Below are positions 41,026 through 57,706 of a DNA stretch of 64,000 nt, piece after piece. The notes under the pieces are model-generated. The model worked only from the letters and a program-made list of their open reading frames with translations, was not told the DNA's origin and did no database searches. The translations under genes and the position numbers were made by a program. The stretch's first letter is position 1. Every line of letters starts with the position of its first letter. The DNA lies in IMG/VR virus record IMGVR_UViG_3300042289_000986, positions 1 through 64,000 of that record. One strand, 5' to 3'.

Positions 41026-41043
41026 AATTCCTCTCGCGCAAAC

Positions 41044-43430: not shown

Positions 43431-43482
43431 TTGAAAAATTCCATTGACAAATAACAACAAACCATATAACCTAATAAACGAT

Positions 43483-44469
43483 ATGAATAAGCATACCACA
43501 GCAGTTACTATCACAGGCAACGGCAAGATCGCCGCTGTCATCGACGGCACGGCATACTCCGTGGAAACCGATCACCCGAACCATGCCAAGGCACTTGACG
43601 CTATTCGCAATAGCGATTGGGAAACCTTCTTGGATTGTGTTGACCTCTCTCGCAAGGTTCGTGACTACGTTCACAACACCAACGTCGAGATTAAGGATGG
43701 CATGATCGTGTTCGATGGTGAATCTGTTCACAACACCTTGACCAAACGAGTCATTAGCTTCATGCAACAAGACTTGCCTTTCAAGCCTATGCTCAACTTC
43801 CTCTGCAATCTCATGGACAATCCTTCCAAGAGAGCGGTTGACGAGTTGTATGACTTCCTTGAAGCAGGTGAGTTGCCCATCACTGAAGATGGTCACTTCC
43901 TCGCCTTCAAGAATGTCAAAGCAGACTACAAGGACATTTACTCTGGCAAGTTTGACAATGCGGTTGGTGCTATCTGTGAAATGAAGCGCAACCAAGTTGA
44001 CGAGGACAAAGATCGCACTTGCAGTTACGGATTGCACTTCTGCTCTATTGCGTATCTCCCTCACTTCCGAGATTGTAATGGTGGTAAGACCATGATCGTG
44101 AAGATCAATCCCAAGGACGTTGTTGCTATTCCCGCCGATTACAACAACACCAAAGGACGCACTTGCCGCTACGAAGTTGTTGGTGAATACACCGAAAACT
44201 GGCGCGAGAAGTTGGGTCGCAACGAAAGCGGTTGGGACGCTCCACTCTACTCATCCGATGGTGGGGAGTATGAGGACGAGGATTCCGATTGGAATGATTG
44301 CTGCGATGATGGCAATTGCTACTGCAACGAAGATGATCAATCCTATGATGATCACTTGGATGAAGTCAGCAACGGATACTCTCCCGATGTTTATGGAGTC
44401 AAACCCACTGGTCAAAAGTTCTACAACCTCCGTGGGGATGATGGGAAGTTCCAAAAGAAGAATGTGTAG
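43483..44469 (+). CDS. rIIB: RIIB-like protein
   Basis: ITEDGHFLAFK, RTCSYGLHFC and VKINPKDVVAIPADYNNTKGRTCRYEVV motifs. Confidence 0.9.
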   Translation: MNKHTTAVTITGNGKIAAVIDGTAYSVETDHPNHAKALDAIRNSDWETFLDCVDLSRKVRDYVHNTNVEIKDGMIVFDGESVHNTLTKRVISFMQQDLPFKPMLNFLCNLMDNPSKRAVDELYDFLEAGELPITEDGHFLAFKNVKADYKDIYSGKFDNAVGAICEMKRNQVDEDKDRTCSYGLHFCSIAYLPHFRDCNGGKTMIVKINPKDVVAIPADYNNTKGRTCRYEVVGEYTENWREKLGRNESGWDAPLYSSDGGEYEDEDSDWNDCCDDGNCYCNEDDQSYDDHLDEVSNGYSPDVYGVKPTGQKFYNLRGDDGKFQKKNV

Positions 44470-44579
44470 GGTTAGTGTTATTGCATTGTGGTGTGGTTGC
44501 TGAAAGGCAAAGGGGGAGGGAAGTCTGGGCTTCTCTCCCCCAACACCATGAATCATATTTTCTTGTTAAGTATTTTCAT

Positions 44580-44652
<73 letters not shown>

Positions 44653-44657
44653 CATCA

Positions 44658-44729
44658 GGGATGGTAGCTCAAAGGTAGAGCAGTGCCCTTTTAAGGCATT
44701 GGTTGTGAGTTCGATCCTCACCCATCCCA
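44658..44729 (+). tRNA. tRNA-Lys (TTT)
   Basis: Cloverleaf; GTGCC-CTTTTAA-GGCAT. Confidence 0.93.
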
Positions 44730-44732
44730 TTC

Positions 44733-44757
44733 AACCCGTCAATCGACGGGTTTTTTT
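44733..44757 (+). terminator. Rho-independent terminator
   Basis: ACCCGTC/GACGGGT plus T-tract. Confidence 0.85.
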
Positions 44758-45135
44758 GTATCTTCCCGAAGTCAATTTCGGGAACATCACGAAACAAATT
44801 TCAGGATCATCGAGCCGAACAAGAAAAGATGAATCATATTTTCTTGTAGAGTGTTGTGGTATGGTCAAATATTTATCGAAAACGTTTGACACTTTGCCAG
44901 CTTTATGCTTTAATCTTTCTTGTAATGAAGAAATTCATGCTACCAATAAGTGTTGTGTTGGAATATTTCGTCAGTTTGACGGAACGATTCCTCCACAGGA
45001 AACAAAAGCCATCTTTCATGGCTCTTAGCGTGGTGGAGTTCACCCAAGAAAATTGGCTTGACGGAGTTGTTCGTCAAGGTAGAATTCTTGATCACCTCTA
45101 CTACTACAACCAAAACAACTAAACAGAAAGAGAAG

Positions 45136-45321
45136 ATGAAACATATACCAACATTGTCGATTGTATTCTTTAAAGATACAGGTCTTTACGGATACGAGTA
45201 TGACGATATCAACGGCCTTACTCAAACTGAGTATGGTTACCTCTCAGTGGATGCTGCCCTTGGCGATGCATTCAAACGCCTCAAGACTTTCACAGTCTTG
45301 GAGGATGTCGAAACCAAGTAA
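45136..45321 (+). CDS. Small hypothetical protein
   Basis: ORF in a plus-strand operon. Confidence 0.5.
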   Translation: MKHIPTLSIVFFKDTGLYGYEYDDINGLTQTEYGYLSVDAALGDAFKRLKTFTVLEDVETK

Positions 45322-45333
45322 GAATAAATCCAA

Positions 45334-45633
45334 ATGAAAAAGAATGGTCTTCTTACTCAAGAAGAACGTCAGGATTATGGGAAAGGGTTTGGAAGCAAAC
45401 CCAATTTCCTCGAAGCTCTTTTCGCTCTTCAGCAAACGTATCCAGAGTGTTACATCGAGGCATGGACACCTGAAGACTACGAAGCCAAGGCTGGTCGTGA
45501 AATCACAATCCGTGAGGCTATGATTGTTTCCAATTACCTCTACAACTATGTGGATGCTAACAAAGGAACGACTTGGAATAAGATCGAAAAATATGTGAAG
45601 AAAACTCTTGACGATCATAGCGACCTTGAATAG
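45334..45633 (+). CDS. Hypothetical protein
   Basis: ORF in a plus-strand operon. Confidence 0.6.
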   Translation: MKKNGLLTQEERQDYGKGFGSKPNFLEALFALQQTYPECYIEAWTPEDYEAKAGREITIREAMIVSNYLYNYVDANKGTTWNKIEKYVKKTLDDHSDLE

Positions 45634-45645
45634 GCTGCAATCGTT

Positions 45646-45858
45646 ATGAACCGCTACAACATCAAAGTCACGATCAGTCTGAACGTCCTCGCGGAAAATT
45701 CGAACGATGTTCTTGACTGTGTGAATGAACTCGACTACAACTTCCTCGAAACAACTGGTAAATGTTTTCTCGAACGCTTCGAGATGGCAGATACTGAAAT
45801 CATGGAAGTTCAACCACTAACCAAAAAAGAAATGAAGGAGATTAAAAGTTATGCCTAA
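45646..45858 (+). CDS. Small acidic hypothetical protein
   Basis: ORF in a plus-strand operon. Confidence 0.55.
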   Translation: MNRYNIKVTISLNVLAENSNDVLDCVNELDYNFLETTGKCFLERFEMADTEIMEVQPLTKKEMKEIKSYA

Positions 45859-46369
45859 CTATTGCACAAACGTTCTCATGCTGAATGAGGATAGTAACGA
45901 TTCAATCTGGGATGTCCTCAGAGATTACATTTCCAATGGAAGATTGGACTTCGAGTTGATTCGTCCGATGCCTGATGAATTGCGCGGAACCACATCTCCA
46001 ACACCAAAAGACACTGATCCTGCTACCAAGGAAGCACTCATACAAAAGTATGGCGCGGATAACTGGTGGGATTGGTGTGTGCAAAACTGGGGAACCAAAT
46101 GGAACTGCGACATGGATGCGGAGAAAAATCAAAGCAAACATTGCATGACAATGGATACTGCATGGAGTCCTCCGATTCCGATTGTGGCGCAACTCTCAAA
46201 GCTAACTGGTCGGGAGTTTCGCTTGACCTATATTGAAGAAGGGGTGGACTTCTGCGGAGAATACTTCAGCTATCCAAACTGGTTGAAGAATCACGACCAT
46301 GAACACTCTCCGATCAGTAGCGCACCCAAGAAACTTCAAAAGGAACTCGTTAGTGAATGGACATGGTAA
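45851..46369 (+). CDS. YubB/DUF1281 ferredoxin-like (Api92-like) protein
   Basis: MPNYCTN, WWDWCVQNWGTKWN and DTAWSPP motifs. Confidence 0.85.
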   Translation: MPNYCTNVLMLNEDSNDSIWDVLRDYISNGRLDFELIRPMPDELRGTTSPTPKDTDPATKEALIQKYGADNWWDWCVQNWGTKWNCDMDAEKNQSKHCMTMDTAWSPPIPIVAQLSKLTGREFRLTYIEEGVDFCGEYFSYPNWLKNHDHEHSPISSAPKKLQKELVSEWTW

Positions 46370-46373
46370 CCTT

Positions 46374-46607
46374 ATGAAAAAAACAATTCAAGAAAAAATA
46401 AACGAAGCCTACGAAGAACTTAGAGAAATTGCGCTCGAACTTGCTGATGACTTAGAAATCTCCCAAGAAATTGATGGCAACTATGCTTGCTTCATCGACA
46501 AGGAAATCTATACAACATTCCAGAAGATGAATGAGAAGATCAACAAGCTCCACGACAAACAGAAAGAGCAAGATGCCAAACAATTGAAATTCGCACTCAA
46601 GCGATGA
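46374..46607 (+). CDS. Hypothetical protein
   Basis: Operonic ORF. Confidence 0.5.
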   Translation: MKKTIQEKINEAYEELREIALELADDLEISQEIDGNYACFIDKEIYTTFQKMNEKINKLHDKQKEQDAKQLKFALKR

Positions 46608-46813
46608 AAAAGAAAAAAGATCAAAAGACTCCTACCGATATTTTAAATTGGTGCGAGAGTCAAGAAGAAAAAACTAAAAAAACAATTGATCATCTATTGG
46701 ATCATGAAGATTGGCAGGATGAAAAAACAAAAAAAGCCTTGACGATTGCTTCACAAATCCTTAAAAGTATAGATGAACTGAAACAAGCAACCTTAGATAT
46801 CATCATTAAATGA
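46604..46813 (+). CDS. Hypothetical protein
   Basis: ATGA overlap. Confidence 0.5.
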   Translation: MKKKKDQKTPTDILNWCESQEEKTKKTIDHLLDHEDWQDEKTKKALTIASQILKSIDELKQATLDIIIK

Positions 46814-46829
46814 AACTTATTTTCTTGTA

Positions 46830-47048
46830 ATGAAAACCATGACTAAAAACCTCACACGAAAACTTTTTAATCTGCCGACAAAAAATGTTCGTAGGCAGAT
46901 GAAGAAGGCAACCAAAAAATATCTTGTGGTCAACGATCACAATCCACATGATGTTTTTGAAATCGAAGCAACCAATCCTAACACCGCTGCTCATGCTGCC
47001 CTCACGCATCTTGGCTGGTGGTTGGCCGAGGATCAATACATCCGCTAA
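46830..47048 (+). CDS. Hypothetical protein
   Basis: Starts immediately after a repeat half-site. Confidence 0.5.
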   Translation: MKTMTKNLTRKLFNLPTKNVRRQMKKATKKYLVVNDHNPHDVFEIEATNPNTAAHAALTHLGWWLAEDQYIR

Positions 47049-47049
47049 C

Positions 47050-47253
47050 ATGATTACAAAAGACAAACGTGGTAACAATGTTGCTGTTGGTAATGTTGTG
47101 AAACTTGGCAGGAAAAAAGATCGTTATCGCATTATCAAAATCATTCAAGTGGATAGTGGGGTTGAGGGAGAAACTTATCCTATTTTTGAATTGCTTTCAC
47201 TCGAACCTCAAACTATCTTCCGTGGCGAACACCAAATCGAACTATCATACTAA
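47050..47253 (+). CDS. Small SH3/KOW-like protein
   Basis: KDKRGNNVAVGNVV, similar to 50300-50533. Confidence 0.45.
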   Translation: MITKDKRGNNVAVGNVVKLGRKKDRYRIIKIIQVDSGVEGETYPIFELLSLEPQTIFRGEHQIELSY

Positions 47254-47254
47254 C

Positions 47255-47422
47255 ATGAAAAAGAACCAACTGATGAACCGAGTGATTGACTATGCTCTCT
47301 GCTACCTCAATTCCAATTGGGATGATTGGGTCGAAGAAGACTTGGGATTGTCAAATGAACAATTTCAAAAAATTATCCAACAGTTTCAAAAAAGTCTTGA
47401 CGAGAAACCAACCAGCGTCTAA
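47255..47422 (+). CDS. Small hypothetical protein
   Basis: Operonic ORF. Confidence 0.45.
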   Translation: MKKNQLMNRVIDYALCYLNSNWDDWVEEDLGLSNEQFQKIIQQFQKSLDEKPTSV

Positions 47423-47434
47423 CCTTATTACGTC

Positions 47435-47740
47435 ATGAAAAAACCAAACACCACAAAACTCAAAGCTATGGCTCGCAATATCAAGCAAAGGATCATTGCT
47501 CGCCAAATCAAACACCTCAATCGTAGTGCCATGTCTGGTGATTACGAACTCCTCAAGATGCATAGCAACGACCTCACGGATGTTCTGTTCATCTGTGGAC
47601 AAATCCTCAATGGCAATTACATAATTGCTCTTGATACTTGGGGTGACTTGGACACTCAAATCCGAGACATCTTTTCCATTCGCTTTATCAATATCCTTGA
47701 AAAAGCGGCTGACTACGAATACCATTTCAACGCACTCTAA
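47435..47740 (+). CDS. Hypothetical protein
   Basis: Operonic ORF. Confidence 0.55.
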   Translation: MKKPNTTKLKAMARNIKQRIIARQIKHLNRSAMSGDYELLKMHSNDLTDVLFICGQILNGNYIIALDTWGDLDTQIRDIFSIRFINILEKAADYEYHFNAL

Positions 47741-47811
47741 CAATATGCTTGTAATCTTTCTTGCAATCATTATACTCTGTTACTACGAAAAGCACGGATC
47801 ACTTTAATATT

Positions 47812-48288
47812 ATGGGATATACACACTACTGGAACTTCGATCCTAACAAGATCGAGAACACCGAAACGCTTCGCAAGAAGTTTAAACGAGCCAGCAAGCA
47901 AATTAAATCATTTGCAAACTGGTTGCCTAACAAAGGGATCAAGATCTGCGGTGGACTTGGAGATGGTAAACCTATCTTCAACGAAACCGAAATCTGGTTC
48001 AATGGAGATGGATCAGAGAAACTCGATCATGAAACGTTTAACCTTCATTGGTCGCGTCCTACTACTCATGGTAGACACAGCGACTTCTGCAAGACCGCCC
48101 GTAAACCTTACGATCTCTTGGTCTGCTTTGCTCTTCTCACATTTGCTGAGATCTTCCCAGAAGCATTCGAGTTCTCCTCCGATGGAGACATGGAAGATAC
48201 TGAGTGGCAAGAAGGCGTAGAGTATTATGAATTGTATACAGGTAAGACCGCCAAGATTCCTCAAAGCATGATGAAACAAGCAGCTTAA
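47812..48288 (+). CDS. Conserved phage protein (MGYTHYW / FCKTARKPYD family)
   Basis: Characteristic motifs. Confidence 0.75.
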   Translation: MGYTHYWNFDPNKIENTETLRKKFKRASKQIKSFANWLPNKGIKICGGLGDGKPIFNETEIWFNGDGSEKLDHETFNLHWSRPTTHGRHSDFCKTARKPYDLLVCFALLTFAEIFPEAFEFSSDGDMEDTEWQEGVEYYELYTGKTAKIPQSMMKQAA

Positions 48289-48295
48289 CAACTCT

Positions 48296-48368
48296 GGGGT
48301 GGTAGCTCAATGGTTAGAGCAGTCGGCTCATAATCGATTGGTTGGGGGTTCGAATCCCTCCCGCCCCA
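48296..48368 (+). tRNA. tRNA with CAT anticodon (likely Ile2/lysidine type, or elongator Met)
   Basis: GTCGG-CTCATAA-TCGAT; D arm resembles bacterial Ile2; paired 1:72. Confidence 0.9.
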
Positions 48369-48376
48369 CAAATATT

Positions 48377-48598
48377 ATGACAAAAAAAGAAAAACAAATG
48401 GAGAAGTACATCAAGGATCTTTGCCGCGATGCAGATGTTGAATACGATCCTGAATTCGGATCTCACATGGACGATGAAAAACTTAACGAACTACTACGAC
48501 AAGATATCCAAAAACAATTGGACTACATGGTTCAAGAGGGTTTTTGTGAACAAGTGGGAGATAAATACATCTGTAGGGAAAACCCTACTGATCTTTAG
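48377..48598 (+). CDS. Hypothetical protein
   Basis: ORF after the tRNA. Confidence 0.5.
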   Translation: MTKKEKQMEKYIKDLCRDADVEYDPEFGSHMDDEKLNELLRQDIQKQLDYMVQEGFCEQVGDKYICRENPTDL

Positions 48599-48956
48599 TA
48601 TTATTATCTTTTCGGCTGTATGTGCAATCATCGTCATTACATATCTGGGGGTCAGTGCAGTGGTGCGCTGGTTGGGTGATGACTGATAGCATTTTCGCCC
48701 GAACACAAATTACGGAATTAAAAAGCAATGAAGTTCAACGCATCTTTATCCTCTCGCCTTAAGGCGTAATCAAAATGCGCCGTGGCGAAAGGTTTTATGA
48801 AAGCAAAACTGAAACAAAACATAACGAGAAGATTGGATCAAGTAGTTCTTCTTCTCAGTAACCCTAACTATGATCCTATCAGGGATGGCTTCTTCCTCCC
48901 ATTCTTCAGGGCATTCTTTCTCAATAAGATTGTTTATAAATAAACTCTTGTTACAA

Positions 48957-48999
48957 TGCAACACTGTGTTAGAATGCAACATGGTGTCGCATACCCGCA
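48957..48999 (+). repeat. 43-bp repeat, copy 1 (TGCAACA-type), followed by purine-pyrimidine alternation
   Basis: One mismatch to 52263-52305. Confidence 0.9.
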
Positions 49000-49046
49000 C
49001 GTAGCGCATACGTGCGCGTAGGCATACGCTATAGAAAAATACAACA

Positions 49047-49448
49047 ATGATATCAACCGCTCTATCAGATCAAATGGTGTTTCAAACCTTTACGATGGTA
49101 AAGGCAAAGAACAACAAGACTTCACCATTCAAAGTTGATGGTTTGATTTGTTTTGGAAAACTCATTCATGAATCCAAGACAGCCAAATACTACAAGTATG
49201 CAAATGGTGTCGTGCAAAAGAAATACAAAGTCAAAGATCAAACAGCACTCAATACCAAGAAAGTAACAGTCAGCAATGATAGGGAAGGAGAGCTTTTGAT
49301 TGAAACCATGCTTAAACCTATGGGAATCAAACGCAGACTCTATCGTGTCCCCAATGATGGACTTCCATACAGCGCAAAAGGCAACTTTACCCGCAATGGA
49401 AACATTCCAAAGCACAGAGCCAAGATCATTGACGTATATTTGCAATGA
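49047..49448 (+). CDS. Basic hypothetical protein
   Basis: ORF; start uncertain. Confidence 0.5.
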   Translation: MISTALSDQMVFQTFTMVKAKNNKTSPFKVDGLICFGKLIHESKTAKYYKYANGVVQKKYKVKDQTALNTKKVTVSNDREGELLIETMLKPMGIKRRLYRVPNDGLPYSAKGNFTRNGNIPKHRAKIIDVYLQ

Positions 49449-49735
49449 AATCCATGAATGAATATCGAAAACATGGAATGAAATCCAATTCTCATTTAAA
49501 GCGGAATTGAGTTTCAAGAAACTTATTTTCTTGTTTGAGGTGCTATTGATGTGAAAGTCGCCTCTCATGAAACTTATTTTCTTGTAAATCCCACTCTCCC
49601 GTAAAAAGTCCTTGTCTGGGTTCATGATTCGGTTATTCTAAGGACGCTTCGGAGGCCCCGTTAAGCCATCGAAAGATGGTTGAGCTACGGAGAAGGGTGA
49701 GTGGGAATAAAACACCACTCACCCTTCAATTTTTA

Positions 49736-49808
49736 GTCCGTGTAGTGAAAAAGGACATCACACAGATCCCCGAAATCTGAATTCCAGCTTCGATTGCTGG
49801 CACGGACA
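49736..49808 (+). tRNA. Atypical tRNA-Arg (CCG)
   Basis: Perfectly paired cloverleaf; anticodon loop CCCCGAA; T-loop TTCGATT. Confidence 0.8.
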
Positions 49809-49813
49809 TTTTT

Positions 49814-49849
49814 AGCCCATCTCTTAAAAGGGATGGGCTTCTTCTTTTT
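49814..49849 (+). terminator. Rho-independent terminator
   Basis: AGCCCATC/GATGGGCT plus T-rich tail. Confidence 0.75.
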
Positions 49850-49981
49850 CCGCAGAAATGTTCGAGGCGGAACGGCTGTGTTCGAGCATCAAAAGAAAAG
49901 GTGAATCATATTTTCTTGTTGTGTTCGAGATTCAGGAAAAAAGTTCTTGTGAACTCGAACCTATCAGGTAATCTCATCAAC

Positions 49982-50047
49982 GGGCTGACTCATCCCCGAA
50001 GGGTGAGAGTTGCAACAGACAAAAATAGAGGAATTAACCTCCAGCCC
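49982..50047 (+). ncRNA. Candidate small structured RNA
   Basis: GGGCTG/CAGCCC closing stem with two internal hairpins, at a predicted TSS. Confidence 0.5.
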
Positions 50048-50065
50048 AAAACTTTCTTTGACAAT

Positions 50066-50187
50066 TTGAGTGCGTGGTGAAAACCTCGTTATGAATAGTG
50101 CTAAAAAATAACTCGCCCATAATTATACACCGACAGGATTAGGCGAAAGTCGGGGAAGCAATAATCCACGTTAGCACACGCACTCAA
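50066..50187 (+). ncRNA. Candidate multi-pseudoknot ncRNA
   Basis: 11-bp closing stem plus five further complementary pairs; 4 nt upstream of tRNA-Cys. Confidence 0.6.
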
Positions 50188-50191
50188 CATC

Positions 50192-50262
50192 GCACCTTTA
50201 GCCAAGTGGTAAGGCAGGAGTCTGCAAAACTCCCATCGTTGGTTCAAATCCAACAAGGTGCT
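50192..50262 (+). tRNA. tRNA-Cys (GCA)
   Basis: GGAGT-CTGCAAA-ACTCC; U73 discriminator. Confidence 0.93.
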
Positions 50263-50299
50263 TGACATTAAACCAAACAACTGATAGAAATAAAAACTC

Positions 50300-50533
50300 A
50301 TGAAAAAAGAATCACGAATATCTTATGGCATAGATACCACAGCAATGTTCTGCAAAGATGAAAAAGGAAGAACATTGCGCGTTGGAGATAGTATCTTCAC
50401 TCGCGGTGGTGCTACTGGTTTCAAAATAAACAAAATCATTTTTAGCGAAGGAAAACCTATGCTGGAATTGATTAGACCATCTTATCGTTTGGCATCTGAA
50501 TGTCGATTGGACACTGGAAAAGAAAACTCTTGA
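50300..50533 (+). CDS. Small SH3/KOW-like protein
   Basis: KDEKGRTLRVGDSI. Confidence 0.45.
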   Translation: MKKESRISYGIDTTAMFCKDEKGRTLRVGDSIFTRGGATGFKINKIIFSEGKPMLELIRPSYRLASECRLDTGKENS

Positions 50534-50567
50534 CACTTCCAAGCAAACCAACTAAACATACACACTC

Positions 50568-50795
50568 ATGAAAACACCATTACTATTCAAAGAAACAGAT
50601 GCCTACATCTTGATGGCACTCACCTTCATCCTTGGAATCATCCTCACGTTCCTTGCTTGCATGATCTTTATGGCCGCGCCATTGAAGAAACAAGCAGTCG
50701 AGCGCGGATTTGCGGAATGGCAAGTCACGGACACTTCCATCGGTGCAACCAAATTCGTGTGGAAAGATAACAATCTTGCTCGCTTCTCATTCTAA
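50568..50795 (+). CDS. Small membrane protein
   Basis: One TM segment and AVERGFAEW motif. Confidence 0.55.
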   Translation: MKTPLLFKETDAYILMALTFILGIILTFLACMIFMAAPLKKQAVERGFAEWQVTDTSIGATKFVWKDNNLARFSF

Positions 50796-51001
50796 TGAAA
50801 AAAGAAACTGACAGCAAAATGGTCATGGTTCACAATGACCAACTCAAGAGTCTTATCACAATTGCATCGGAAGCATTGAATTGTTTGAATGAATATGCGG
50901 GTGATGATTCCGAAACTTACCAACATCTTAAAAAACAATTTGAAAAGTGGAATCGCTATGATTACAAATAATTTTTAGGATTGGTGTAGTCATAACAAAA
51001 G

Positions 51002-51032
51002 AAAGGCACAGGCGAAAGTCTGTGCCTTTTTT
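51002..51032 (+). terminator. Rho-independent terminator
   Basis: GGCACAGGC-GAAA-GTCTGTGCC plus T-tract. Confidence 0.85.
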
Positions 51033-51133
51033 CTTTTCCCCGTATGAGAAGTCGTTCGCATAGGGCAACCCAGAACACAAGAAAAGATGAATCATATTTT
51101 CTTGTAGTGTTCGAGATTCAGGAAAAAAAGTCC

Positions 51134-51162
51134 TTGTCAGGTTCGAGGTAATTGCTTACTCT
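51134..51162 (+). promoter_or_regulatory. Representative cassette promoter (TTGTCA-N17-TACTCT) with A-tract UP element
   Basis: Equivalent -35 boxes at about 40115, 41182, 49612, 49947, 51968, 52980, 54927 and 55396. Confidence 0.7.
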
Positions 51163-51171
51163 TTGCGCGTT

Positions 51172-51813
51172 ATGAAATTCACCACCATCACACAAGCAAC
51201 CGCAATCGTTCACACACTATCCGCACCGAGCAAGATGCCTGGTCATGCTTATTCAATCCCTGCCTTTCGTTGCAAGGTCGGTTCTTTGCTTCGCAAGATC
51301 AAGGGAAGCATTTGCTCCAAGTGCTATGCTCTCAAGGGTCGTTACATTTTCCAAAACGTCATTGATGCTATGGAAAAACGTTTTCAGTCTTTGACTAATC
51401 CTCTGTGGGTTGATGCCATGACATTCCTTATCAATAAAAAGGAAAAGAGTGGATTCTTTCGCTGGCATGACAGCGGAGATTTACAAGACATCGACCACCT
51501 GCAAAAGATTGTGCAAGTTGCAAAGAATCTTCCGTCAATCAAATTCTGGCTTCCCACCAGAGAATACGGCATCGTCTCTGACTACATCGCAAAGGTTGAA
51601 AATTCTTTTCCCGACAACCTCTGTGTTCGTCTCTCTGCCTATATGCTTGATGGTAAAACTCCCGATTCCGTCGCGCAACGCTTGGGGGTTCAAGTGAGCG
51701 GTGTATCCAAGGATGGATATACTTGCCCCGCTTCCAAGCAAAACAATATCTGTGGAGATTGTCGAGCTTGTTGGGACAGGTCGGTTTATTGCATTAGCTA
51801 CAAGCAACACTGA
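51172..51813 (+). CDS. GP88-like Cys-rich protein
   Basis: PSKMPG, CSKCYA, FRWHDSGD and CGDCRACW motifs. Confidence 0.8.
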   Translation: MKFTTITQATAIVHTLSAPSKMPGHAYSIPAFRCKVGSLLRKIKGSICSKCYALKGRYIFQNVIDAMEKRFQSLTNPLWVDAMTFLINKKEKSGFFRWHDSGDLQDIDHLQKIVQVAKNLPSIKFWLPTREYGIVSDYIAKVENSFPDNLCVRLSAYMLDGKTPDSVAQRLGVQVSGVSKDGYTCPASKQNNICGDCRACWDRSVYCISYKQH

Positions 51814-51833
51814 CGAATAGAAAATCCCTTCTC

Positions 51834-51870
51834 AAAGCCCTCTGTCGAAAGACAGGGGGTTTTTTCTTTT
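51834..51870 (+). terminator. Rho-independent terminator
   Basis: CCCTCTGTC-GAAA-GACAGGGGG plus T-tract. Confidence 0.85.
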
Positions 51871-52005
51871 GTATATACTGACATCAACTTTACTTGATAT
51901 TTTCAGGAGATAAAGAAAAGATGAATCATATTTTCTTGTCGTGTTCGAGGTTCAGGAAAAAAAGTTCTTGCCATAGTTCTTTTAAAATGATTCAATGTCC
52001 GTGTT

Positions 52006-52278
52006 ATGAAAACACCTAAAGAAAACTCTGATTGTCCCAAGTGCAAAGTTGGCAAACTCGTATCTGTCATCGACAAACAACAGATCATCTCAATGGGGGA
52101 AGTCATTGAAGTCCCATCATTCGGGTTCTACGAGTGCAGTCGTTGCCGCCGCACTACCTTGATTGCCAAGGAAATTCAAAAGGCGATGCAGTATCTGGAC
52201 TATTATCATTACAACTACAGCAACGAACCCTTCGAGCTTTACCCAGTAAAGACGAGTAAATTTGCAACAGTGTGTTAG
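52006..52278 (+). CDS. YgiT/MqsA-type zinc-finger protein
   Basis: CPKC...CSRC. Confidence 0.55.
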   Translation: MKTPKENSDCPKCKVGKLVSVIDKQQIISMGEVIEVPSFGFYECSRCRRTTLIAKEIQKAMQYLDYYHYNYSNEPFELYPVKTSKFATVC

Positions 52279-52305
52279 AATGCAACATGGTGTCGCATAC
52301 CCGCA
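52263..52305 (+). repeat. 43-bp repeat, copy 2
   Basis: Matches 48957-48999. Confidence 0.9.
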
Positions 52306-52385
52306 GGTGACGCATATACGTATACGCGCACACGCGATTAGATAATCCAGAAACTTATTTTCTTGTAAGCGAAAAATTAAATAAA

Positions 52386-52697
52386 ATGAAAACGAAACTT
52401 AAACTACCAGAAACTCAAATTGCAAAGTTCGTTCCAATATCAGATATCATTCCCAAAGATTGGCATGGCTGGTTCTATGATGTGATTAGCCGAGATGCAC
52501 CCTTCAATTGGGGAGACAACAATAGAACGCTCATAGATGCAATCTCCTTTGGACACCATGCGGAAGATGTATTGGACATGGAAGAGTCCTTTGGAGACAA
52601 TACTGAAGAGAATGGAAATATCAAAGGCCGCGAAGAGTTCTTCGATATTCTCAATGCATTGGCAAAGAAGAATATCTATGTAGATTTAGAAAATTAG
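52386..52697 (+). CDS. Hypothetical protein
   Basis: ORF followed by a terminator. Confidence 0.6.
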   Translation: MKTKLKLPETQIAKFVPISDIIPKDWHGWFYDVISRDAPFNWGDNNRTLIDAISFGHHAEDVLDMEESFGDNTEENGNIKGREEFFDILNALAKKNIYVDLEN

Positions 52698-52718
52698 TAG
52701 ATAGGTGTGTTGTGTGTT

Positions 52719-52753
52719 GGGGTGGTGGTTGAAAAACCATCACCCCTTTTTTT
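52719..52753 (+). terminator. Rho-independent terminator
   Basis: GGGGTGGTGG/CCATCACCCC plus T-tract. Confidence 0.85.
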
Positions 52754-53064
52754 GTAGTTGAATATCAATAGGTTATATCCAATAACCTATATTTAATAAC
52801 CCAAACTCATTAGGATGTGAGAATTGGGAAACTTATTTTCTTGTTTGATCTTCTCCTCGCCAGGAATTCCGCGACATCTGATAAAACAAAATCGTCTTCT
52901 TCGCCTGGACAATTTTCAGGATCAAAAGAAAGCATGAATCTTATTTTCTTGTAGAGTGTTCCCACGGGAAAAAAATCCGTTGCATCGGCTGTGCCTTCTG
53001 CTATTGTTGGCCTTGTCGAAAGACACAAACACAAACAAACAACCAAACAAAATAGACAAAAGTT

Positions 53065-53607
53065 ATGGCTAACATCAAAATCAATGCCCTCGATATCTTG
53101 AGGGAATCCACCACGAACGGATGCAAATTCATCTCGTTCCTCTACATGACCAAAGGCACGGGCGAAACCTCGCGTTACACGCTTAACTTTGGTATCGACT
53201 ACAAGGCAGCTTGCGAAGCGGACAAAATCGCTCTGGAAGCCTATCAGCCGAGCAACGACATTGAAGCCGAAGCCAAGGGGCAAATGCTTCAGTCGCTCAC
53301 CGAAACGCTCACCCAAGGCGTGAGCAGCAGCTACACGCAAAAAGATACGTTCGATAACATCGGCAAAGGTATTCGCCAACACAAGGAAACTGGTGAAATC
53401 TACCTCTACGGATTCGTCCAACAAAAGGAGCAAGTTGCTCCTCCGACAAATCCGAAGAAGCCTGTCAACAGCCGTCCTCTGACTCTGGCAAAGCGTGACA
53501 TTGAAAAGGCTCTGGAGTTTAAGCGCAACAAATTCGGTCAATTCATCCTTACCCCCGAAAACATCGCAGGTGTTAAGGTCTGCGGCGATCTGATCGAATT
53601 GCACTAA
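53065..53607 (+). CDS. Hypothetical protein
   Basis: Single-gene cassette with strong codon bias. Confidence 0.7.
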   Translation: MANIKINALDILRESTTNGCKFISFLYMTKGTGETSRYTLNFGIDYKAACEADKIALEAYQPSNDIEAEAKGQMLQSLTETLTQGVSSSYTQKDTFDNIGKGIRQHKETGEIYLYGFVQQKEQVAPPTNPKKPVNSRPLTLAKRDIEKALEFKRNKFGQFILTPENIAGVKVCGDLIELH

Positions 53608-53624
53608 ACCCTCCCGCTCAAACC

Positions 53625-53654
53625 AACCCGCTCCCGAAAGGGGGCGGGTTTTTT
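53625..53654 (+). terminator. Rho-independent terminator
   Basis: CCCGCTCCC-GAAA-GGGGGCGGG plus T-tract. Confidence 0.9.
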
Positions 53655-53802
53655 GTTTGAGTTACACTTTCTCTCTGTCCGAAATCATTTGGTTCGATTC
53701 CACCTCTCAAAAGAAAGCATGAATCTTATTTTCTTGTAGACTCGAACCTCCCGTAAAAAATTCCTTTTCCCTCGATCAGTCCCATCTACACTCGCAGACG
53801 TT

Positions 53803-54174
53803 ATGACTAATTCAATTCCATCCACACTCAAGCTGGAAGATATTCAAGGTATCGCAGACTTGACGGCAAAGTTTCTCAACCTGTCGATTCGTCCTCGCGC
53901 AATCATCAAGGACACTCGCAACGGCAAAGCTTACACCCACAAGGGTTGGTTCTCTCTGCCAAAATGGGCTTGGAATCGTGGGGATCGTTACGTCACCTAC
54001 TACGTTGTCCATGAGGTTTGTCACTTCTATGCAGGTGGCATTGATCATGGAACCCTGTTCAAGAAGGTAGAGGACAAGGCTCTTGCTTACTGGGGAATCT
54101 ACATCAAACGAAACAAAGTATACCCCAAGAAAATCTTCAATGGGCCTTGTCAAAACGACCCGATTGATTGCTGA
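53803..54174 (+). CDS. SprT/YgjP-like zinc metalloprotease
   Basis: VVHEVCH...HG..F motif. Confidence 0.7.
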   Translation: MTNSIPSTLKLEDIQGIADLTAKFLNLSIRPRAIIKDTRNGKAYTHKGWFSLPKWAWNRGDRYVTYYVVHEVCHFYAGGIDHGTLFKKVEDKALAYWGIYIKRNKVYPKKIFNGPCQNDPIDC

Positions 54175-54196
54175 CAAGTCTGGTGTTGTTGTGATC

Positions 54197-54228
54197 AACC
54201 CATCGTCCGAAAGGGCGGTGGGTTTTTT
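54197..54228 (+). terminator. Rho-independent terminator
   Basis: CCCATCGTCC-GAAA-GGGCGGTGGG plus T-tract. Confidence 0.85.
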
Positions 54229-54368
54229 CTTTCATACCAACACACACACATCAAACACAGATTTCACGGGCACACAAAAAAGGATGAATCTTATTTTCTT
54301 GTAGAGTGTCCCCAACGGGCAAAAAACTTCTTCCCTTCCTGACCATTCCACATACACTCATCCTCGTT

Positions 54369-54776
54369 ATGGGAACACGACTATATCCAATCACCAACGA
54401 CCACAGCATCCTTGAGGCACTCGCAGAAGTGCCAAAGGGAACAATGGAGCGTCTCACGAAGATGCAAGCCAACCACAAGGAACTCCTCGATGCCGCCCGT
54501 TCGCGTGGCGAGGGTATCTACGATCTGGAGCACGAACTCTGGTGCGAGATCAACGACAATCCCGACATGGGGCCAATGGACAACTTCCACACTTTCGGGT
54601 GGGGCAAGCTCCGTAGTGGAGTCTACGAACTCCTTGAGGCCAACCCCGACAAGTGGGAAGGCGAAACCTACAGCGGCTCCTGCACGGACGCAGACCTCTG
54701 TGCCCAAATGCTCTTGGCGCAAGGGGTGGTTACCTCCGTCTCACCAAGCGATATCGGCGGCTTGGCTTGGGGCTAA
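54369..54776 (+). CDS. Hypothetical protein
   Basis: Single-gene cassette. Confidence 0.65.
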   Translation: MGTRLYPITNDHSILEALAEVPKGTMERLTKMQANHKELLDAARSRGEGIYDLEHELWCEINDNPDMGPMDNFHTFGWGKLRSGVYELLEANPDKWEGETYSGSCTDADLCAQMLLAQGVVTSVSPSDIGGLAWG

Positions 54777-54794
54777 ACCAACCCAACTCACACG

Positions 54795-54826
54795 AACCCT
54801 CACGGAGAAATCCGTGGGGGTTTTTT
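54795..54826 (+). terminator. Rho-independent terminator
   Basis: CCCTCACGGA-GAAA-TCCGTGGGGG plus T-tract. Confidence 0.85.
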
Positions 54827-54964
54827 CTTTCCCTGATCGAACCTCGAAGCAGATCCTGAACTTCGAGCATCAAAAGAATTGAAGAATCTTATTTTCTTGT
54901 TGTTTCGAGATTCAGGAAAAAAGTCCTTCCCATCCTGATCGAACCAACTATAGTGATTATCGTT

Positions 54965-55255
54965 ATGAGAAAAAACACCACACCCGATATGCTGAACCCC
55001 AACACCATCCTGTTCAACATCGCATCCCGCACCTGTATGAAGCTCTCTCCCAAAAAGGAGGAGAGGGTTCTTGGTTACATCTATAACGTCATGAACGGTG
55101 ACGGACTCTACGACAATGCCAGCAAGGAGGTAATCCTTGAGGCATACATTGACCAAGAGAGCGGTGGTCGCCCAGACGTAACATGGGCGCACCTCATCGC
55201 TGAAGCCTTGGACGATATCCAAGGCACAGGCGTCCTCCAAGAATTCCGCCTGTAG
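54965..55255 (+). CDS. Hypothetical protein
   Basis: Single-gene cassette. Confidence 0.6.
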   Translation: MRKNTTPDMLNPNTILFNIASRTCMKLSPKKEERVLGYIYNVMNGDGLYDNASKEVILEAYIDQESGGRPDVTWAHLIAEALDDIQGTGVLQEFRL

Positions 55256-55273
55256 CCTTCAACCACTCACAAG

Positions 55274-55305
55274 ACCCATCGCTCGAAAGGGCGGTGGGTT
55301 TTTTT
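55274..55305 (+). terminator. Rho-independent terminator
   Basis: Near-copy of the 54197 terminator. Confidence 0.85.
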
Positions 55306-55433
55306 GTGCCTACACCACAGGACCACCTGCAACCCAGAACAAAAGAAAGAGTGAATCATATTTTCTTGTAAAGTATCCCCACCAGAAAAAAACCTTTGAC
55401 CCCTGATCGTTTCTATCTATACTCATCATCGTT

Positions 55434-55658
55434 ATGAGAAACCAAAACATCACACCAAGCACATCAGTTTCTGATCTCATTCATATGATGGCAAACGCAG
55501 CCACCACCGGAGCAACCTGTGGAGGTCACACCAAGTCCCGAATGAACTGGAAGTTCTTCGAGGAATACAAGGAGGAACTTGAAAACTCTGGGGGAGTTGC
55601 TCCTTCGATGGACGAACTCTACGACCTCGGAATCTTCAACGGAAAGGGGGCATGGTAA
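55434..55658 (+). CDS. Hypothetical protein
   Basis: Behind TTGACC-N16-TATACT. Confidence 0.6.
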   Translation: MRNQNITPSTSVSDLIHMMANAATTGATCGGHTKSRMNWKFFEEYKEELENSGGVAPSMDELYDLGIFNGKGAW

Positions 55659-55855
55659 TGAGAGCCACCGAATTCAGATGCAAGGGTCACCATTTCCGTG
55701 TGGAAGAATCCTTCTGTGGTGATACCCCAAACAATAACGTCTGGGTATTGAACAGAGCAAAGACCAACTGGGATTGGAAGCTGCTCACCAACTACGACTA
55801 CGATCATCTTGTTCGTAGACTCAAACGAGTAGGCATCGACTACTTCAAAGACTGA
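55658..55855 (+). CDS. Hypothetical protein
   Basis: TAATG overlap. Confidence 0.55.
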   Translation: MRATEFRCKGHHFRVEESFCGDTPNNNVWVLNRAKTNWDWKLLTNYDYDHLVRRLKRVGIDYFKD

Positions 55856-55876
55856 TCATCTTCAACCTCCGATCAC

Positions 55877-55908
55877 AACCCACTGCTGGCAACGGCAGTG
55901 GGTTTTTT
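55877..55908 (+). terminator. Rho-independent terminator
   Basis: CCCACTGCTG-GCAA-CGGCAGTGGG plus T-tract. Confidence 0.85.
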
Positions 55909-56111
55909 CTTTCCCACATCTGTCCAGCCCGTCACCTGCGCTCACAAGAAAATATGATTCATCTCTTCTTGTTGTCCCAGTTGAACAGTGGTTCTAACCC
56001 ACCCACCAGTTCTTATGACAACCAAAGGTTCCCATCAGTAGAACAATCTATTCTTTATGACACTCGCGGCGGTTGTCCACCAACCACTCATCATCTATCA
56101 TTGATACTGTT

Positions 56112-57052: not shown

Positions 57053-57706
57053 TTAGAATTTGAGTGCCATCTGGTATTCTTTTTTCTTTTCTTTTTTAAC
57101 CTTTGCTATAGTTTTATCAAACATTGGATCGTTTGTATCATACAGTTTTCCAATTTCTGGTTTATGATTTTTGGGAAATCTTCTCCATATATGATTTGCA
57201 TATATTTTTGATCTTTTATTGACACACCTGTAAACCAATTTTGAATTGTAACCATTTGAGGTTAAATCAAACATTCCTTCGTAAAAGTTTAAGAGGTATC
57301 CTTCTTTGTCGAATTTTCCGATAAGTCCCTTGAACTTCAAACTTTTTCTTCCCATGACTCCTACTTTGTTAGTTCCCTTTTTTCTTTCCAGTTCATTGTG
57401 TTCTTGGGGAGTCAGATATTGCAGGTTATAGTATGCATTGTTGGTTTTATCTGGACTTCTATGATGGACATGGTAGTTGCTATAATCTTCTCTGTAATCA
57501 AAGGTTATTTTTACCAATCTATGAACCAAAAATGATTTGTGTCCTTTGTTGTAGAATTTAACTTCGTGATATCCTAGTCTGTTGATATGTCCATACAATT
57601 TTTTCTTATCTTCTCGACGGCGGATATTTCCTTTGTTTGATACTTCGTATAAATGTTTAAATTCTTCTAAGAAGACAGGTTTCCAAATTTCGTTAATAGT
57701 TTCCAT
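57053..57706 (-). CDS. NUMOD4-HNH homing endonuclease
   Basis: EIWKPV...YEVSNKGNIR, VHRLV and VHH...NNAYYNLQYLT..HN; start reassigned to METINE. Confidence 0.85.
   Translation of the reverse strand: METINEIWKPVFLEEFKHLYEVSNKGNIRRREDKKKLYGHINRLGYHEVKFYNKGHKSFLVHRLVKITFDYREDYSNYHVHHRSPDKTNNAYYNLQYLTPQEHNELERKKGTNKVGVMGRKSLKFKGLIGKFDKEGYLLNFYEGMFDLTSNGYNSKLVYRCVNKRSKIYANHIWRRFPKNHKPEIGKLYDTNDPMFDKTIAKVKKEKKKEYQMALKF

What the first reader, a model, noticed from the sequence alone, without database searches (positions are those of the whole stretch)
50066..50187. Candidate multi-pseudoknot ncRNA immediately upstream of tRNA-Cys
Seen: closing stem TTGAGTGCGTG(50066)/CACGCACTCAA(50177), stacked on TGCTAA(50099)/TTAGCA(50171). 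Further crossing complementarities are TTATG(50089)/CATAA(50118), TCGCC(50113)/GGCGA(50142), CCGAC(50130)/GTCGG(50149) and GGATTA(50136)/TAATCC(50162). There is no plus-strand ORF, and it ends 4 nt before the tRNA, so RNase P cleavage would release it. I do not recognise it as a hammerhead, twister, pistol, HDV-type ribozyme or riboswitch. Inference: a novel structured RNA (ribozyme, switch or protein decoy).
Basis: partly seen in the sequence, partly recalled or inferred. Interest (0 to 1): 0.78.

Follow-up and report, generated by a model that had tools for sequence, protein, structure and literature searches.

The report
New small structured phage RNA cassette
A 122-base stretch just upstream of a tRNA gene in a freshwater T4-like phage is a real folded RNA gene that matches no known family and turns up as a self-contained cassette in other lake phages, but what it does is still unknown.

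Summary
By itself this is weak evidence: about 17 perfect 11-bp inverted repeats occur in the window, and the fold z-score is -3. Comparison makes the case.

- **Distribution.** The same 122-nt module occurs in three lake-phage contexts with no flanking homology. Close relatives of two carriers lack it at that exact point.
- **Substitutions.** The window and L007 copies differ by nine transitions. A seventh gives G-U on the + strand only. Chance probability is about 3e-5.
- **Core.** The 91-nt core differs at two sites, so the three crossing pseudoknot helices cannot be tested. One proposed helix (TTATG/CATAA) is contradicted.
- **Family.** No Rfam 15 family matches. T4 rnaC/rnaD are positional analogues only.
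- **Context.** In L007 the module lies in an RNA island with GOLLD and a pistol ribozyme. In the window it fills a variable slot between another covarying small RNA and tRNA-Cys.

Best reading: a new orphan small-RNA gene, co-transcribed with tRNA-Cys, released by RNase P and acting in trans. No transcript of the element itself was seen. A ribozyme or ligand-binding role remains open.

The parts
50066..50187 (+). The 122-nt structured RNA module (whole element).
   Evidence: Homology to L007 3378-3499 (92.7%) and L008 1381-1479 stops at these ends, with no flank similarity. An independent 120-kb ENA contig (L013) begins exactly at base 50066. CM R1 scores 162 bits here and finds no second copy in the window.
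50066..50075 (+). P1 5' strand. It pairs with 50178-50187 to form the 10-bp closing helix; an 11th pair, G50076-C50177, is an alternative.
   Evidence: Perfect inverted repeat. 50070/50183 changes from G-C to A-U in L007.
50076..50085 (+). P2: a 3-bp hairpin capped by a GAAA tetraloop (GGU-GAAA-ACC).
   Evidence: Two of its three pairs change on both sides in L007 and L008 (G-C to A-U, U-A to C-G) while the loop stays GAAA.
50086..50097 (+). J2/3, a 12-nt joining strand that holds variable site 50092 (U to C). It can alternatively pair with 50074-50080 ('Palt').
50098..50104 (+). P3 5' strand. It pairs with 50171-50177 (7 bp) and stacks on P1 through the continuous 3' strand.
   Evidence: G50098-C50177 becomes G-U in L007, which is tolerated only on the + strand.
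50105..50170 (+). Near-invariant core. Candidate crossing helices are Pa 50113-50117/50142-50146, Pb 50130-50134/50149-50153 and Pc 50136-50141/50162-50167. The continuous strand 50136-50146 would pair with both flanks.
   Evidence: The helices exist, but all 16 pairs are invariant in the three copies. The nested ensemble favours Pa at 0.93. The only core change in this span is U50123C, in a predicted loop.
50171..50187 (+). 3' strands of P3 (50171-50177) and P1 (50178-50187).
50192..50262 (+). tRNA-Cys(GCA), 4 nt downstream. Its RNase P site would set the 3' side of the element.
   Evidence: ARAGORN; Rfam tRNA at 67.6 bits. It is conserved in L003, L004 and L024, which lack the element.
49982..50047 (+). 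'Module B', a separate 66-nt structured RNA 18 nt upstream: a 6-bp closing stem plus two hairpins. It is the left border of the variable slot.
   Evidence: Conserved in L004, L020 and L024, with two independently covarying pairs (C-G/U-A and A-U/C-G).
49902..49920 (+). Core of a promoter-like repeat (GAATCATATTTTCTTGT...), the likely start of the transcription unit that carries module B, the element and tRNA-Cys.
   Evidence: About 20 copies lie between 38.5 and 56 kb. They sit 30-40 nt upstream of start codons, and one ends 12 nt before tRNA-Arg at 44580. Promoter function is inferred.
49814..49839 (+). Terminator-like hairpin followed by a T-run. It closes the preceding unit, so the element's unit probably starts after it.
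   Evidence: 11-bp stem, 6 G-C pairs.

Best explanation
Window 50066-50187 (+) is a stand-alone small-RNA gene of a previously undescribed family, carried by a freshwater T4-like phage.

**Fold.** A 10-11-bp helix (P1) joins the 5' and 3' ends. A 3-bp GAAA-capped hairpin (P2) and a 7-bp helix (P3) branch from it. P3 encloses a 66-nt (50105-50170), almost invariant core that may form crossing helices.

**Expression and processing (inferred).** The element sits in a variable slot of an RNA-gene island, between a 66-nt structured RNA and tRNA-Cys. It is probably transcribed from the phage promoter-like repeat at about 49900-49920 as part of a multi-RNA precursor. RNase P cleavage at tRNA-Cys +1 would free its 3' side. 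The end-to-end helix P1 would then protect it as a stable RNA that acts in trans, most likely by binding a protein or small ligand through the conserved core.

**Mobility.** It spreads among co-occurring lake phages as a discrete cassette, by recombination at the borders between RNA modules.

**Shown versus inferred.**
- Shown: the module boundaries, presence/absence polymorphism, selection on P1 and P2, + strand polarity, and absence from Rfam.
- Inferred: transcription, RNase P release, stability and trans action.

I put about 0.85 on 'a real structured RNA under selection' and about 0.4-0.45 on the trans-acting stable-RNA mechanism.
For: 1. **Discrete module in unrelated flanks.** L007 3378-3499 and L008 1381-1479 match only window 50065-50187. 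Translated comparison of L007 and the window finds one weak protein match elsewhere.
2. **Presence/absence.**
   - L003 and L004 (97% aa identity in the nearby GP88-like gene) lack it at the exact point.
   - Ten contigs encoding the same 149-aa protein as L008 lack it.
   - Contigs in an RNA run (X19) and a DNA run (X13) show the joined form skipping 140-142 nt.
3. **Selection on RNA structure.** All nine window-versus-L007 differences are transitions.
   - Six form three compensatory pairs, in P1 and P2.
   - One is G-C to G-U.
   - Two lie in predicted loops.
   - Random placement gives three or more double-changed pairs in 3e-5 of trials.
   - Seven of the nine changes fall in the 31 peripheral positions (p = 0.0015).
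4. **Strand.** The G-U pair and the GAAA loop fit only the + strand. All neighbouring RNA genes share that orientation: tRNA-Cys in the window, GOLLD and pistol in L007, tRNA-Asp in L008.
5. **Niche.**
   - The phage has rIIA/rIIB.
   - The element lies among tRNAs and other covarying small RNAs.
   - In L007 it lies in a 2.2-kb non-coding island with GOLLD (141 bits), a pistol ribozyme (47 bits, above threshold) and another RNA with a 17-bp closing stem.
6. **The slot is transcribed in a relative.** RNA-library contigs cover 49689-50050 and 50191-50262, while the flanking coding stretches have zero depth in the same runs.
7. **Not coding, not a leader switch.** There is no ORF on the + strand and no downstream ORF that it could regulate.
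Against: - No read or contig from an RNA library covers the element itself.
- Only three lineages carry it, and two of these (L007 and L008) are 99% alike over 100 nt. The covariation therefore rests on essentially one divergence event set.
- The core is invariant, so its fold is unknown.
- No partner protein or ligand is indicated by the neighbourhood.
- Relatives do without it, so it is dispensable.
- The high identity (92.7%) between otherwise unalignable phages could partly reflect recent transfer rather than constraint.
- In the L007-type sequence a nested fold prefers an alternative hairpin (Palt) over P2.
Confidence: 0.5

Rival explanations
1. It is a self-cleaving or otherwise catalytic RNA of a new class. 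It would cut the multi-RNA precursor at a module border, as the pistol ribozyme next to GOLLD does in L007.
For: - It sits 0-4 nt from the next RNA module in both full copies.
- L007 has a bona fide pistol ribozyme about 350 nt upstream in the same non-coding island.
- A 91-nt near-invariant core with covarying peripheral helices and dense pseudoknot potential is the conservation pattern of small ribozymes.
Against: - No match to hammerhead, twister, twister-sister, pistol, hatchet, hairpin or HDV models, even at E <= 10.
- The strand order of the crossing helices (a b c a' b' c') is not the HDV nested double pseudoknot.
- RNase P already provides the cut at tRNA-Cys, and relatives process the same tRNA without the element.
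- There are no data on RNA ends.
Confidence: 0.2
2. It is a ligand-binding aptamer without an expression platform. It would act as an RNA 'sponge' or sensor for a small molecule, for example a host immune signalling nucleotide.
For: - The compact core is almost invariant, while P1 and P2 are free to covary, as in riboswitch aptamers.
- Five substitutions fit two mutually exclusive 5' hairpins, P2 and Palt, which hints at a conformational switch.
- It is an accessory element gained and lost like phage counter-defence genes.
Against: - No similarity to any riboswitch class in Rfam.
- No regulated ORF downstream.
- No ligand is suggested by the gene neighbourhood.
- The Palt coincidence rests on a single lineage comparison.
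Confidence: 0.1
3. It is a DNA-level selfish element: a miniature inverted-repeat insertion whose 11-bp terminal inverted repeats are recognised by a transposase or nuclease. RNA structure would be incidental.
For: - Perfect 11-bp terminal inverted repeats sit exactly at the module ends.
- It shows presence/absence polymorphism in close relatives and insertion at different sites.
- The P1 'covariation' would also be expected for matched terminal repeats.
Against: - Two compensatory pairs lie in the internal 3-bp GAAA hairpin, which a terminal-repeat model does not explain.
- C50177U breaks the repeat symmetry but keeps a G-U pair.
- There is one copy per genome stretch examined and no target-site duplication.
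- It has the same orientation as the neighbouring RNA genes in all three contexts.
- The interior is far more conserved than the ends, the opposite of a MITE.
Confidence: 0.07
4. It is a cis-acting 5' leader of tRNA-Cys that tunes processing or expression of that tRNA.
For: It lies 4 nt upstream of tRNA-Cys and is presumably on the same transcript.
Against: - The L007 copy has no tRNA within the 5.8 kb fetched and is followed by another structured RNA.
- The L008 copy lies downstream of tRNA-Asp, at the position where relatives have module B.
- Relatives carry the same tRNA-Cys with an empty slot or with a different 345-nt insert.
Confidence: 0.05
5. It is a recently transferred, functionless hitch-hiker, and the apparent structure and covariation are coincidence.
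For: - There are only three lineages with very similar sequences.
- 11-bp inverted repeats are common in this window.
- The single-sequence z-score is modest.
Against: - Three compensated pairs among nine substitutions have p about 3e-5.
- Substitutions avoid the core (p = 0.0015).
- The module boundaries are sharp in three unrelated flanks.
Confidence: 0.08

Closest known systems
Phage T4 stable RNAs rnaC (species 1) and rnaD (species 2) in the tRNA cluster
   Same: These are small (139 and 119 nt) non-coding stable RNAs of unknown function. They are encoded head-to-tail with a tRNA gene (1 nt from tRNA-Arg) in a T4-type phage and matured from a common precursor with tRNAs (annotation in AF158101; processing from established T4 literature). 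The window phage is T4-like (rIIA/rIIB), and the element is 122 nt long and 4 nt from a tRNA.
   Different: There is no sequence or structure similarity. CM R1 scores below 9 bits anywhere in the T4 region. rnaC carries a tRNA-like T-arm and rnaD folds weakly (z = -0.8). The element lies upstream of its tRNA, not downstream.
GOLLD and ROOL RNAs (large ornate RNAs of phages, often beside tRNA genes)
   Same: They share the ecological and genomic niche: lake-derived phage sequence, RNA-gene islands with tRNAs, and unknown function. One copy of the element lies about 430 nt downstream of a GOLLD hit (RF02032, 141 bits) in L007.
   Different: GOLLD and ROOL are 500-800 nt and form multimeric assemblies (bioRxiv 10.1101/2024.12.08.627333). 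The element is 122 nt, is separated from GOLLD by a pistol ribozyme, and occurs without GOLLD in the window.
Small self-cleaving ribozymes found in phage RNA islands (pistol, twister, hatchet, hammerhead, HDV-like)
   Same: Similar size range, a closing helix, pseudoknot potential, a highly conserved core with covarying outer helices, and a location at borders of RNA genes. A pistol ribozyme is a neighbour in L007.
   Different: No model match at E <= 10. The helix topology is not HDV-like. No cleavage site or catalytic evidence exists.
Bacterial Y RNAs (YrlA/Yrn1)
   Same: Roughly 100-130-nt RNAs whose 5' and 3' ends form a long closing stem around a structured module. Some are phage-encoded, and they act by binding a protein (Rsr/Ro).
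   Different: There is no YrlA model hit on the element; the only weak YrlA hit in the window is on two real tRNAs at 44600-44712. The element has no tRNA-like domain, and no Rsr homologue was seen among the proteins checked.

Membership tests
Any Rfam 15 family | Covariance-model score at or above the family's gathering threshold | tested here: not met
   Gathering scan of the whole window found only five tRNAs. E <= 10 scans of 49300-50400 and of 50050-50195 found no credible hit on the element.
Structured RNA under purifying selection (generic) | Compensatory base changes that keep predicted helices | tested here: met
   P1 has one pair and P2 two pairs changed on both sides. P3 has one G-C to G-U change. 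All 88 cells (one sequence at one pair) form standard pairs, against 27-40% when the 3' partners are slid. Random-placement p is about 3e-5. This rests on only 2-3 sequences.
   All 16 pairs are invariant in the three copies. Helix count is enriched over shuffles (7 versus 2.6). The TTATG/CATAA helix is contradicted by U50092C.
tRNA / tmRNA | Cloverleaf or tRNA-like domain with a T-arm | tested here: not met
   ARAGORN and the Rfam tRNA model find nothing at 50066-50187.
T4 rnaC / rnaD | Sequence or structure homology to the T4 species 1 or 2 RNAs | tested here: not met
   CM R1 with filters off over AF158101 68000-76000 gave a best score of 8.8 bits, none on rnaC or rnaD.
T4 rnaC / rnaD | Small non-coding RNA gene abutting a tRNA gene in a T4-type phage | tested here: met
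   rIIA/rIIB homologues at 41415-44469. There is a 4-nt gap to tRNA-Cys. T4 layout is shown.
Known self-cleaving ribozyme classes | Conserved catalytic core recognised by the class model | tested here: not met
   No hammerhead, twister, pistol, hatchet, hairpin or HDV hit at E <= 10. The same library does detect a pistol in L007.
Known self-cleaving ribozyme classes | Site-specific self-cleavage | not testable with these tools
   This needs an in vitro transcription and cleavage assay, or end-specific RNA-seq.
Riboswitch | Aptamer followed by an expression platform and a regulated ORF | tested here: not met
   The element is followed by tRNA-Cys in the window and by another structured RNA in L007. 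No terminator or SD-sequestering hairpin is present.
MITE-like DNA element | Terminal inverted repeats | tested here: met
   Perfect 11-bp repeats at both ends.
MITE-like DNA element | Target-site duplication and multiple copies per genome | tested here: not met
   No duplication is visible at the filled versus empty site. There is a single copy in the 64-kb window and in every locus.
GOLLD RNA | Match to RF02032 | tested here: not met
   No GOLLD hit in window 35000-58000 at E <= 0.5. In L007 the full-model hit ends 428 nt before the element.

The most novel reading that the evidence does not exclude
The element is the founding member of a new class of compact, multiply pseudoknotted functional RNA, either a small ribozyme or a ligand-binding RNA sponge or sensor. 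Lake phages would swap it as a plug-in cassette between slots of their RNA-gene islands. It may have a bistable 5' domain (P2 versus Palt) that gates the closing helix.
Probability: 0.2. Interest if true: 0.85.

Novelty: new member of a known kind. Interest (0 to 1): 0.5.

Why it matters
Phage tRNA and RNA-gene islands hold several orphan structured RNAs (T4 species 1 and 2, GOLLD, ROOL), and after decades none has an established function. This element adds a small, experimentally tractable member. At 122 nt it can be made synthetically. Its borders are sharply defined, its core is almost invariant, and natural 'with' and 'without' phage variants exist for comparison.

It also exposes a variable slot between a second covarying small RNA and tRNA-Cys. 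That slot can be empty, hold this element, or hold an unrelated 345-nt non-coding insert. This suggests phages exchange RNA genes as cassettes, much as they exchange accessory protein genes. If the core proves to be catalytic or ligand-binding, it would be a new functional RNA class.

Tried and rejected
1. **Known RNA family.** Four Rfam scans covering the window, including a 146-nt query at E <= 10, gave nothing.
2. **16S rRNA mimic.** I noticed that ACAGGATTAG and GCGAAAG..GGGGA.GCAA resemble the 16S 760-810 region.
   - Tested against E. coli rrsB, the local score is 21 versus 18.9 +/- 2.3 in shuffles (20% reach it).
   - A shared 10-mer occurs in 15% of shuffles.
   - Rejected as chance.
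3. **Homology to T4 rnaC/rnaD.** Rejected.
4. **HDV-like double pseudoknot.** The strand order does not fit.
5. **Promoter at the TTGACA at 50057-50062.** No -10 hexamer lies at 16-18 nt, and a start there would fall inside the element.
6. **More homologues.**
   - The viral-contig budget (8 scans) went on the homologue hunt: one GP88 related-locus scan and seven pattern scans. One pattern scan was wasted on a mistyped pattern.
   - One metagenome scan and two genome scans were also run. Together these gave only three lineages.
   - blastn against 50,697 GenBank phages found nothing.
   - A search with the spurious antisense ORF as a protein handle found nothing.
   - The CM scan of GP88-family and L007-neighbour relatives (about 190 kb) and of the ten L008-type contigs (65 kb) found no diverged copy.
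7. **Expression.** No RNA run was listed for the element alone. The RNA-library contigs belong to a relative without it.
8. **Shared partner protein.** tblastx of L007 and L008 against the window found only one weak, distant match.
9. **Palindromic AUAAUUAU (50119-50126) as a dimerisation site.** The palindrome is broken in L007 and L008 by U50123C.

Full report
**What the window is.** The window is the first 64 kb of a 211,587-bp viral contig from lake water, IMGVR_UViG_3300042289_000986. PHROGs identifies rIIA (41415-43430) and rIIB (43444-44469), so the phage is T4-like.
- The stretch 40-56 kb has 40-49% G+C, against about 30% elsewhere.
- It is packed with short ORFs and with four of the window's five Rfam-confirmed tRNA genes; the fifth, tRNA-Leu, is at 36105-36188.
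- It holds about 20 copies of a promoter-like repeat, GAATCATATTTTCTTGT. These lie 30-40 nt before start codons, and one ends 12 nt before tRNA-Arg at 44580.

**Checking the observation.** All three + frames have stops. The element ends 4 nt (CATC) before a solid tRNA-Cys at 50192-50262 (67.6 bits).

On its own this is weak evidence:
- Perfect 11-bp inverted repeats with arms within 200 nt occur about 17 times in this A+T-rich window.
- The fold z-score is -3.0 on the + strand and -3.2 on the - strand.
- The inner 100 nt holds 7 helices of at least 5 bp, against 2.6 +/- 1.5 in shuffles (1%).

**Comparative evidence.**

*Carriers.* Exact-word scans of public collections found the same module in only two other places. 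One is L007 3378-3499, on a 121-kb viral contig. The other is L008 1381-1479, a Lake Mendota-type contig that ends inside the element. Similarity to the window covers 50065-50187 for L007 and begins at 50057 for L008, and nothing else aligns. At protein level L007 and the window share one weak match far away.

*Relatives that lack it.*
- L003 and L004 have 97% identity in the GP88-like protein 1 kb downstream. They lack the element exactly at this point: L004 reads ...AAAATTTT-AT-CATC-tRNA.
- Ten contigs that encode the identical 149-aa protein of L008 also lack it.
- Contigs in an RNA library (X19) and a DNA run (X13) show the joined form that skips 140-142 nt.

*Assembly breaks.* Assemblers break at the element. 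A 120-kb contig starts at its first base, another starts just after variable site 58, and L008 ends at base 99. This is what a sequence shared by co-occurring genomes produces.

The element is therefore a discrete cassette that is gained and lost.

**Selection on RNA structure.** The window and L007 copies differ at nine positions, all transitions.
- Six changes form three compensatory pairs: 50070/50183 in the closing helix P1, and 50077/50084 and 50078/50083 in a 3-bp hairpin P2.
- A seventh change (C50177U) turns a G-C pair into G-U. This is allowed only if the + strand is the RNA.
- The remaining two changes (50092, 50123) lie in segments that are unpaired in the model.
- Placing nine transitions at random gives three or more double-changed pairs in 3e-5 of 200,000 trials. 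Seven of nine changes fall in the 31 peripheral positions (p = 0.0015).
- The GAAA loop, the G-U pair and the shared orientation with every neighbouring RNA gene all point to the + strand. Those neighbours are tRNA-Cys here, GOLLD and pistol in L007, and tRNA-Asp in L008.

**Fold.**

*Supported helices.* P1 is 50066-75/50178-87. P2 is 50076-85. P3 is 50098-104/50171-77. Together they form a three-way junction in which P1 and P3 share a continuous 3' strand.

The arrangement is striking. Pb is a hairpin, and 11 contiguous bases of its 14-nt loop (50136-50146) could pair with both flanks. All 16 of these pairs are invariant in the three copies, so they remain untested. A nested ensemble simply prefers Pa.

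*Unexplained.* The five changes at element positions 12, 13, 18, 19 and 27 also fit a mutually exclusive hairpin, 'Palt' (50074-80/50086-92). Palt is weak in the window copy but dominant in the L007 type. This could mean a bistable 5' domain, or it could be coincidence.

**Context.**

*The slot in the window.* Eighteen nucleotides upstream lies a separate 66-nt RNA, 'module B' (49982-50047). It has a closing stem and two hairpins, and two independently covarying pairs across four lineages. The distance from the conserved hairpin-2 word of module B (GAGGAATTAACCTCC, 50028 in the window) to the start of tRNA-Cys is:

| Locus | Distance (nt) | Slot content |
|---|---|---|
| L004 | 34 | empty |
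| window | 164 | this element |
| L020-L022, L024 | 362-365 | an unrelated 345-nt non-coding insert |

In L008 the element instead sits where relatives have module B.

*L007.* The element lies in a 2.2-kb non-coding island. In order, the island holds GOLLD (141 bits, E = 3e-38, just under the gathering score of 150), a pistol ribozyme (47.4 bits, threshold 34.5), about 350 nt of unassigned sequence, the element, and directly after it another RNA with a 17-bp closing stem (z = -4.6).

*Transcription.* RNA-library contigs from a relative cover 49689-50050 and 50191-50262, while the flanking coding stretches have zero depth in those runs. The island is therefore represented as RNA, but the element itself was not observed.

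**What it is not.**
- No Rfam 15 family matches, even at E <= 10.
- It is not a tRNA or tmRNA.
- It is not homologous to T4 rnaC or rnaD, which are the closest positional analogues.
- It is not HDV-like in topology.
- It is not a riboswitch layout, because no platform or regulated ORF follows.
- A resemblance to 16S rRNA that I noticed is not significant.
- A MITE-type reading explains the terminal repeats and the mobility. It does not explain the covarying internal hairpin, the G-U change, the single copy number, or a core that is more conserved than the ends.

**Most likely mechanism.** It is a stand-alone small-RNA gene. It is co-transcribed from the phage promoter-like repeat at about 49900-49920 together with module B and tRNA-Cys. 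RNase P would free it on the 3' side, P1 would stabilise it, and it would act in trans through its conserved core. All of these steps are inferred.

I rate 'a real structured RNA under selection' at about 0.85 and this mechanism at about 0.4-0.45. The rivals are:

| Rival | Confidence |
|---|---|
| New self-cleaving or processing ribozyme | 0.2 |
| Ligand-binding aptamer or sponge | 0.1 |
| Functionless hitch-hiker | 0.08 |
| DNA-level selfish element | 0.07 |
| tRNA-Cys leader | 0.05 |

**Novelty and limits.** This is a new family within a known kind, the orphan structured RNAs of phage tRNA and RNA-gene islands.
- The evidence rests on three lineages, two of which are nearly identical.
- Covariance-model scans of about 190 kb from GP88-family and L007-neighbour relatives, plus the ten L008-type contigs (65 kb), found no diverged copy.

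A sensitive search of the full metagenome collections and a simple in vitro test would decide between the readings.

Noticed in passing
window 49982-50047: 'Module B' is a 66-nt RNA with a 6-bp closing stem and two hairpins. It is conserved in L004, L020 and L024, with two independently covarying pairs, and has no Rfam match. It forms the left border of the variable slot.
   Followed up: partly
window 38500-56000 (e.g. 44549-44567, 49902-49920, 51079-51128, 51912-51970, 54862-54924): About 20 copies of a repeat with core GAATCATATTTTCTTGT lie 30-40 nt upstream of start codons, and one ends 12 nt before tRNA-Arg. It is probably a phage-specific promoter. Some copies share a longer 5' leader of about 60 nt.
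   Followed up: partly
L024 2348-2691 (also L020-L022; diverged copy L048 12011-12268, 83%): An unrelated 345-nt non-coding insert fills the same slot between module B and tRNA-Cys. Its fold z-score is -2.6 and it has no Rfam hit. The diverged copy would allow a covariation test.
   Followed up: partly
L007 1860-4040: A 2.2-kb non-coding RNA island holds GOLLD (2546-2950, 141 bits against a gathering score of 150), a pistol ribozyme (2960-3027, above threshold) directly after it, about 350 nt of unassigned sequence, the element, then an RNA with a 17-bp closing stem (3498-3615, z = -4.6), and about 400 nt more of G+C-rich non-coding sequence.
   Followed up: partly
window 49736-49808 and 49692-49727: ARAGORN calls a tRNA-Arg(CCG) that the Rfam tRNA model does not report even at E <= 10. 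It has a good T-arm but an odd D-arm and C at position 33. It is preceded by a perfect 13-bp hairpin. It may be a degenerate tRNA or a tRNA-like RNA. An RNA-library contig from a relative covers it.
   Followed up: partly
window 50074-50092: Five lineage-specific substitutions fit both P2 and a mutually exclusive 7-bp hairpin (Palt). Palt dominates the predicted ensemble in the L007 and L008 type but not in the window copy.
   Followed up: partly
L013 base 1; L017 base 1; L008 base 1479: Independent assemblies break at the element's first base, just after its variable site 58, and at its base 99. This is consistent with the element being shared by several co-occurring phage genomes in the same lakes.
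   Followed up: partly
window 40000-56000: A 16-kb stretch at 40-49% G+C sits inside a genome of about 30% G+C. It contains rIIA and rIIB, many small ORFs, four of the five Rfam-confirmed tRNAs (plus ARAGORN's doubtful tRNA-Arg CCG) and the promoter-like repeats.
   Followed up: no
window 50264-50299 and 50532-50567: Sigma-70-like promoters of the form TTGACA-N17-TAnAnA end about 9 nt before the ATG of two small genes (50300, 50568). This implies very short leaders.
   Followed up: no
L008 1049/1050 versus L020-L026: There is a further 100-nt presence/absence difference inside the same RNA and small-gene region of the L008-type phages.
   Followed up: no
window 57053-57826 (-), 1577-4744 (+), 60824-61765 (+): An HNH/NUMOD4 homing-endonuclease-like gene, a 1055-aa protein made of RCC1 repeats, and a GMP-reductase/IMPDH-family gene.
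   Followed up: no
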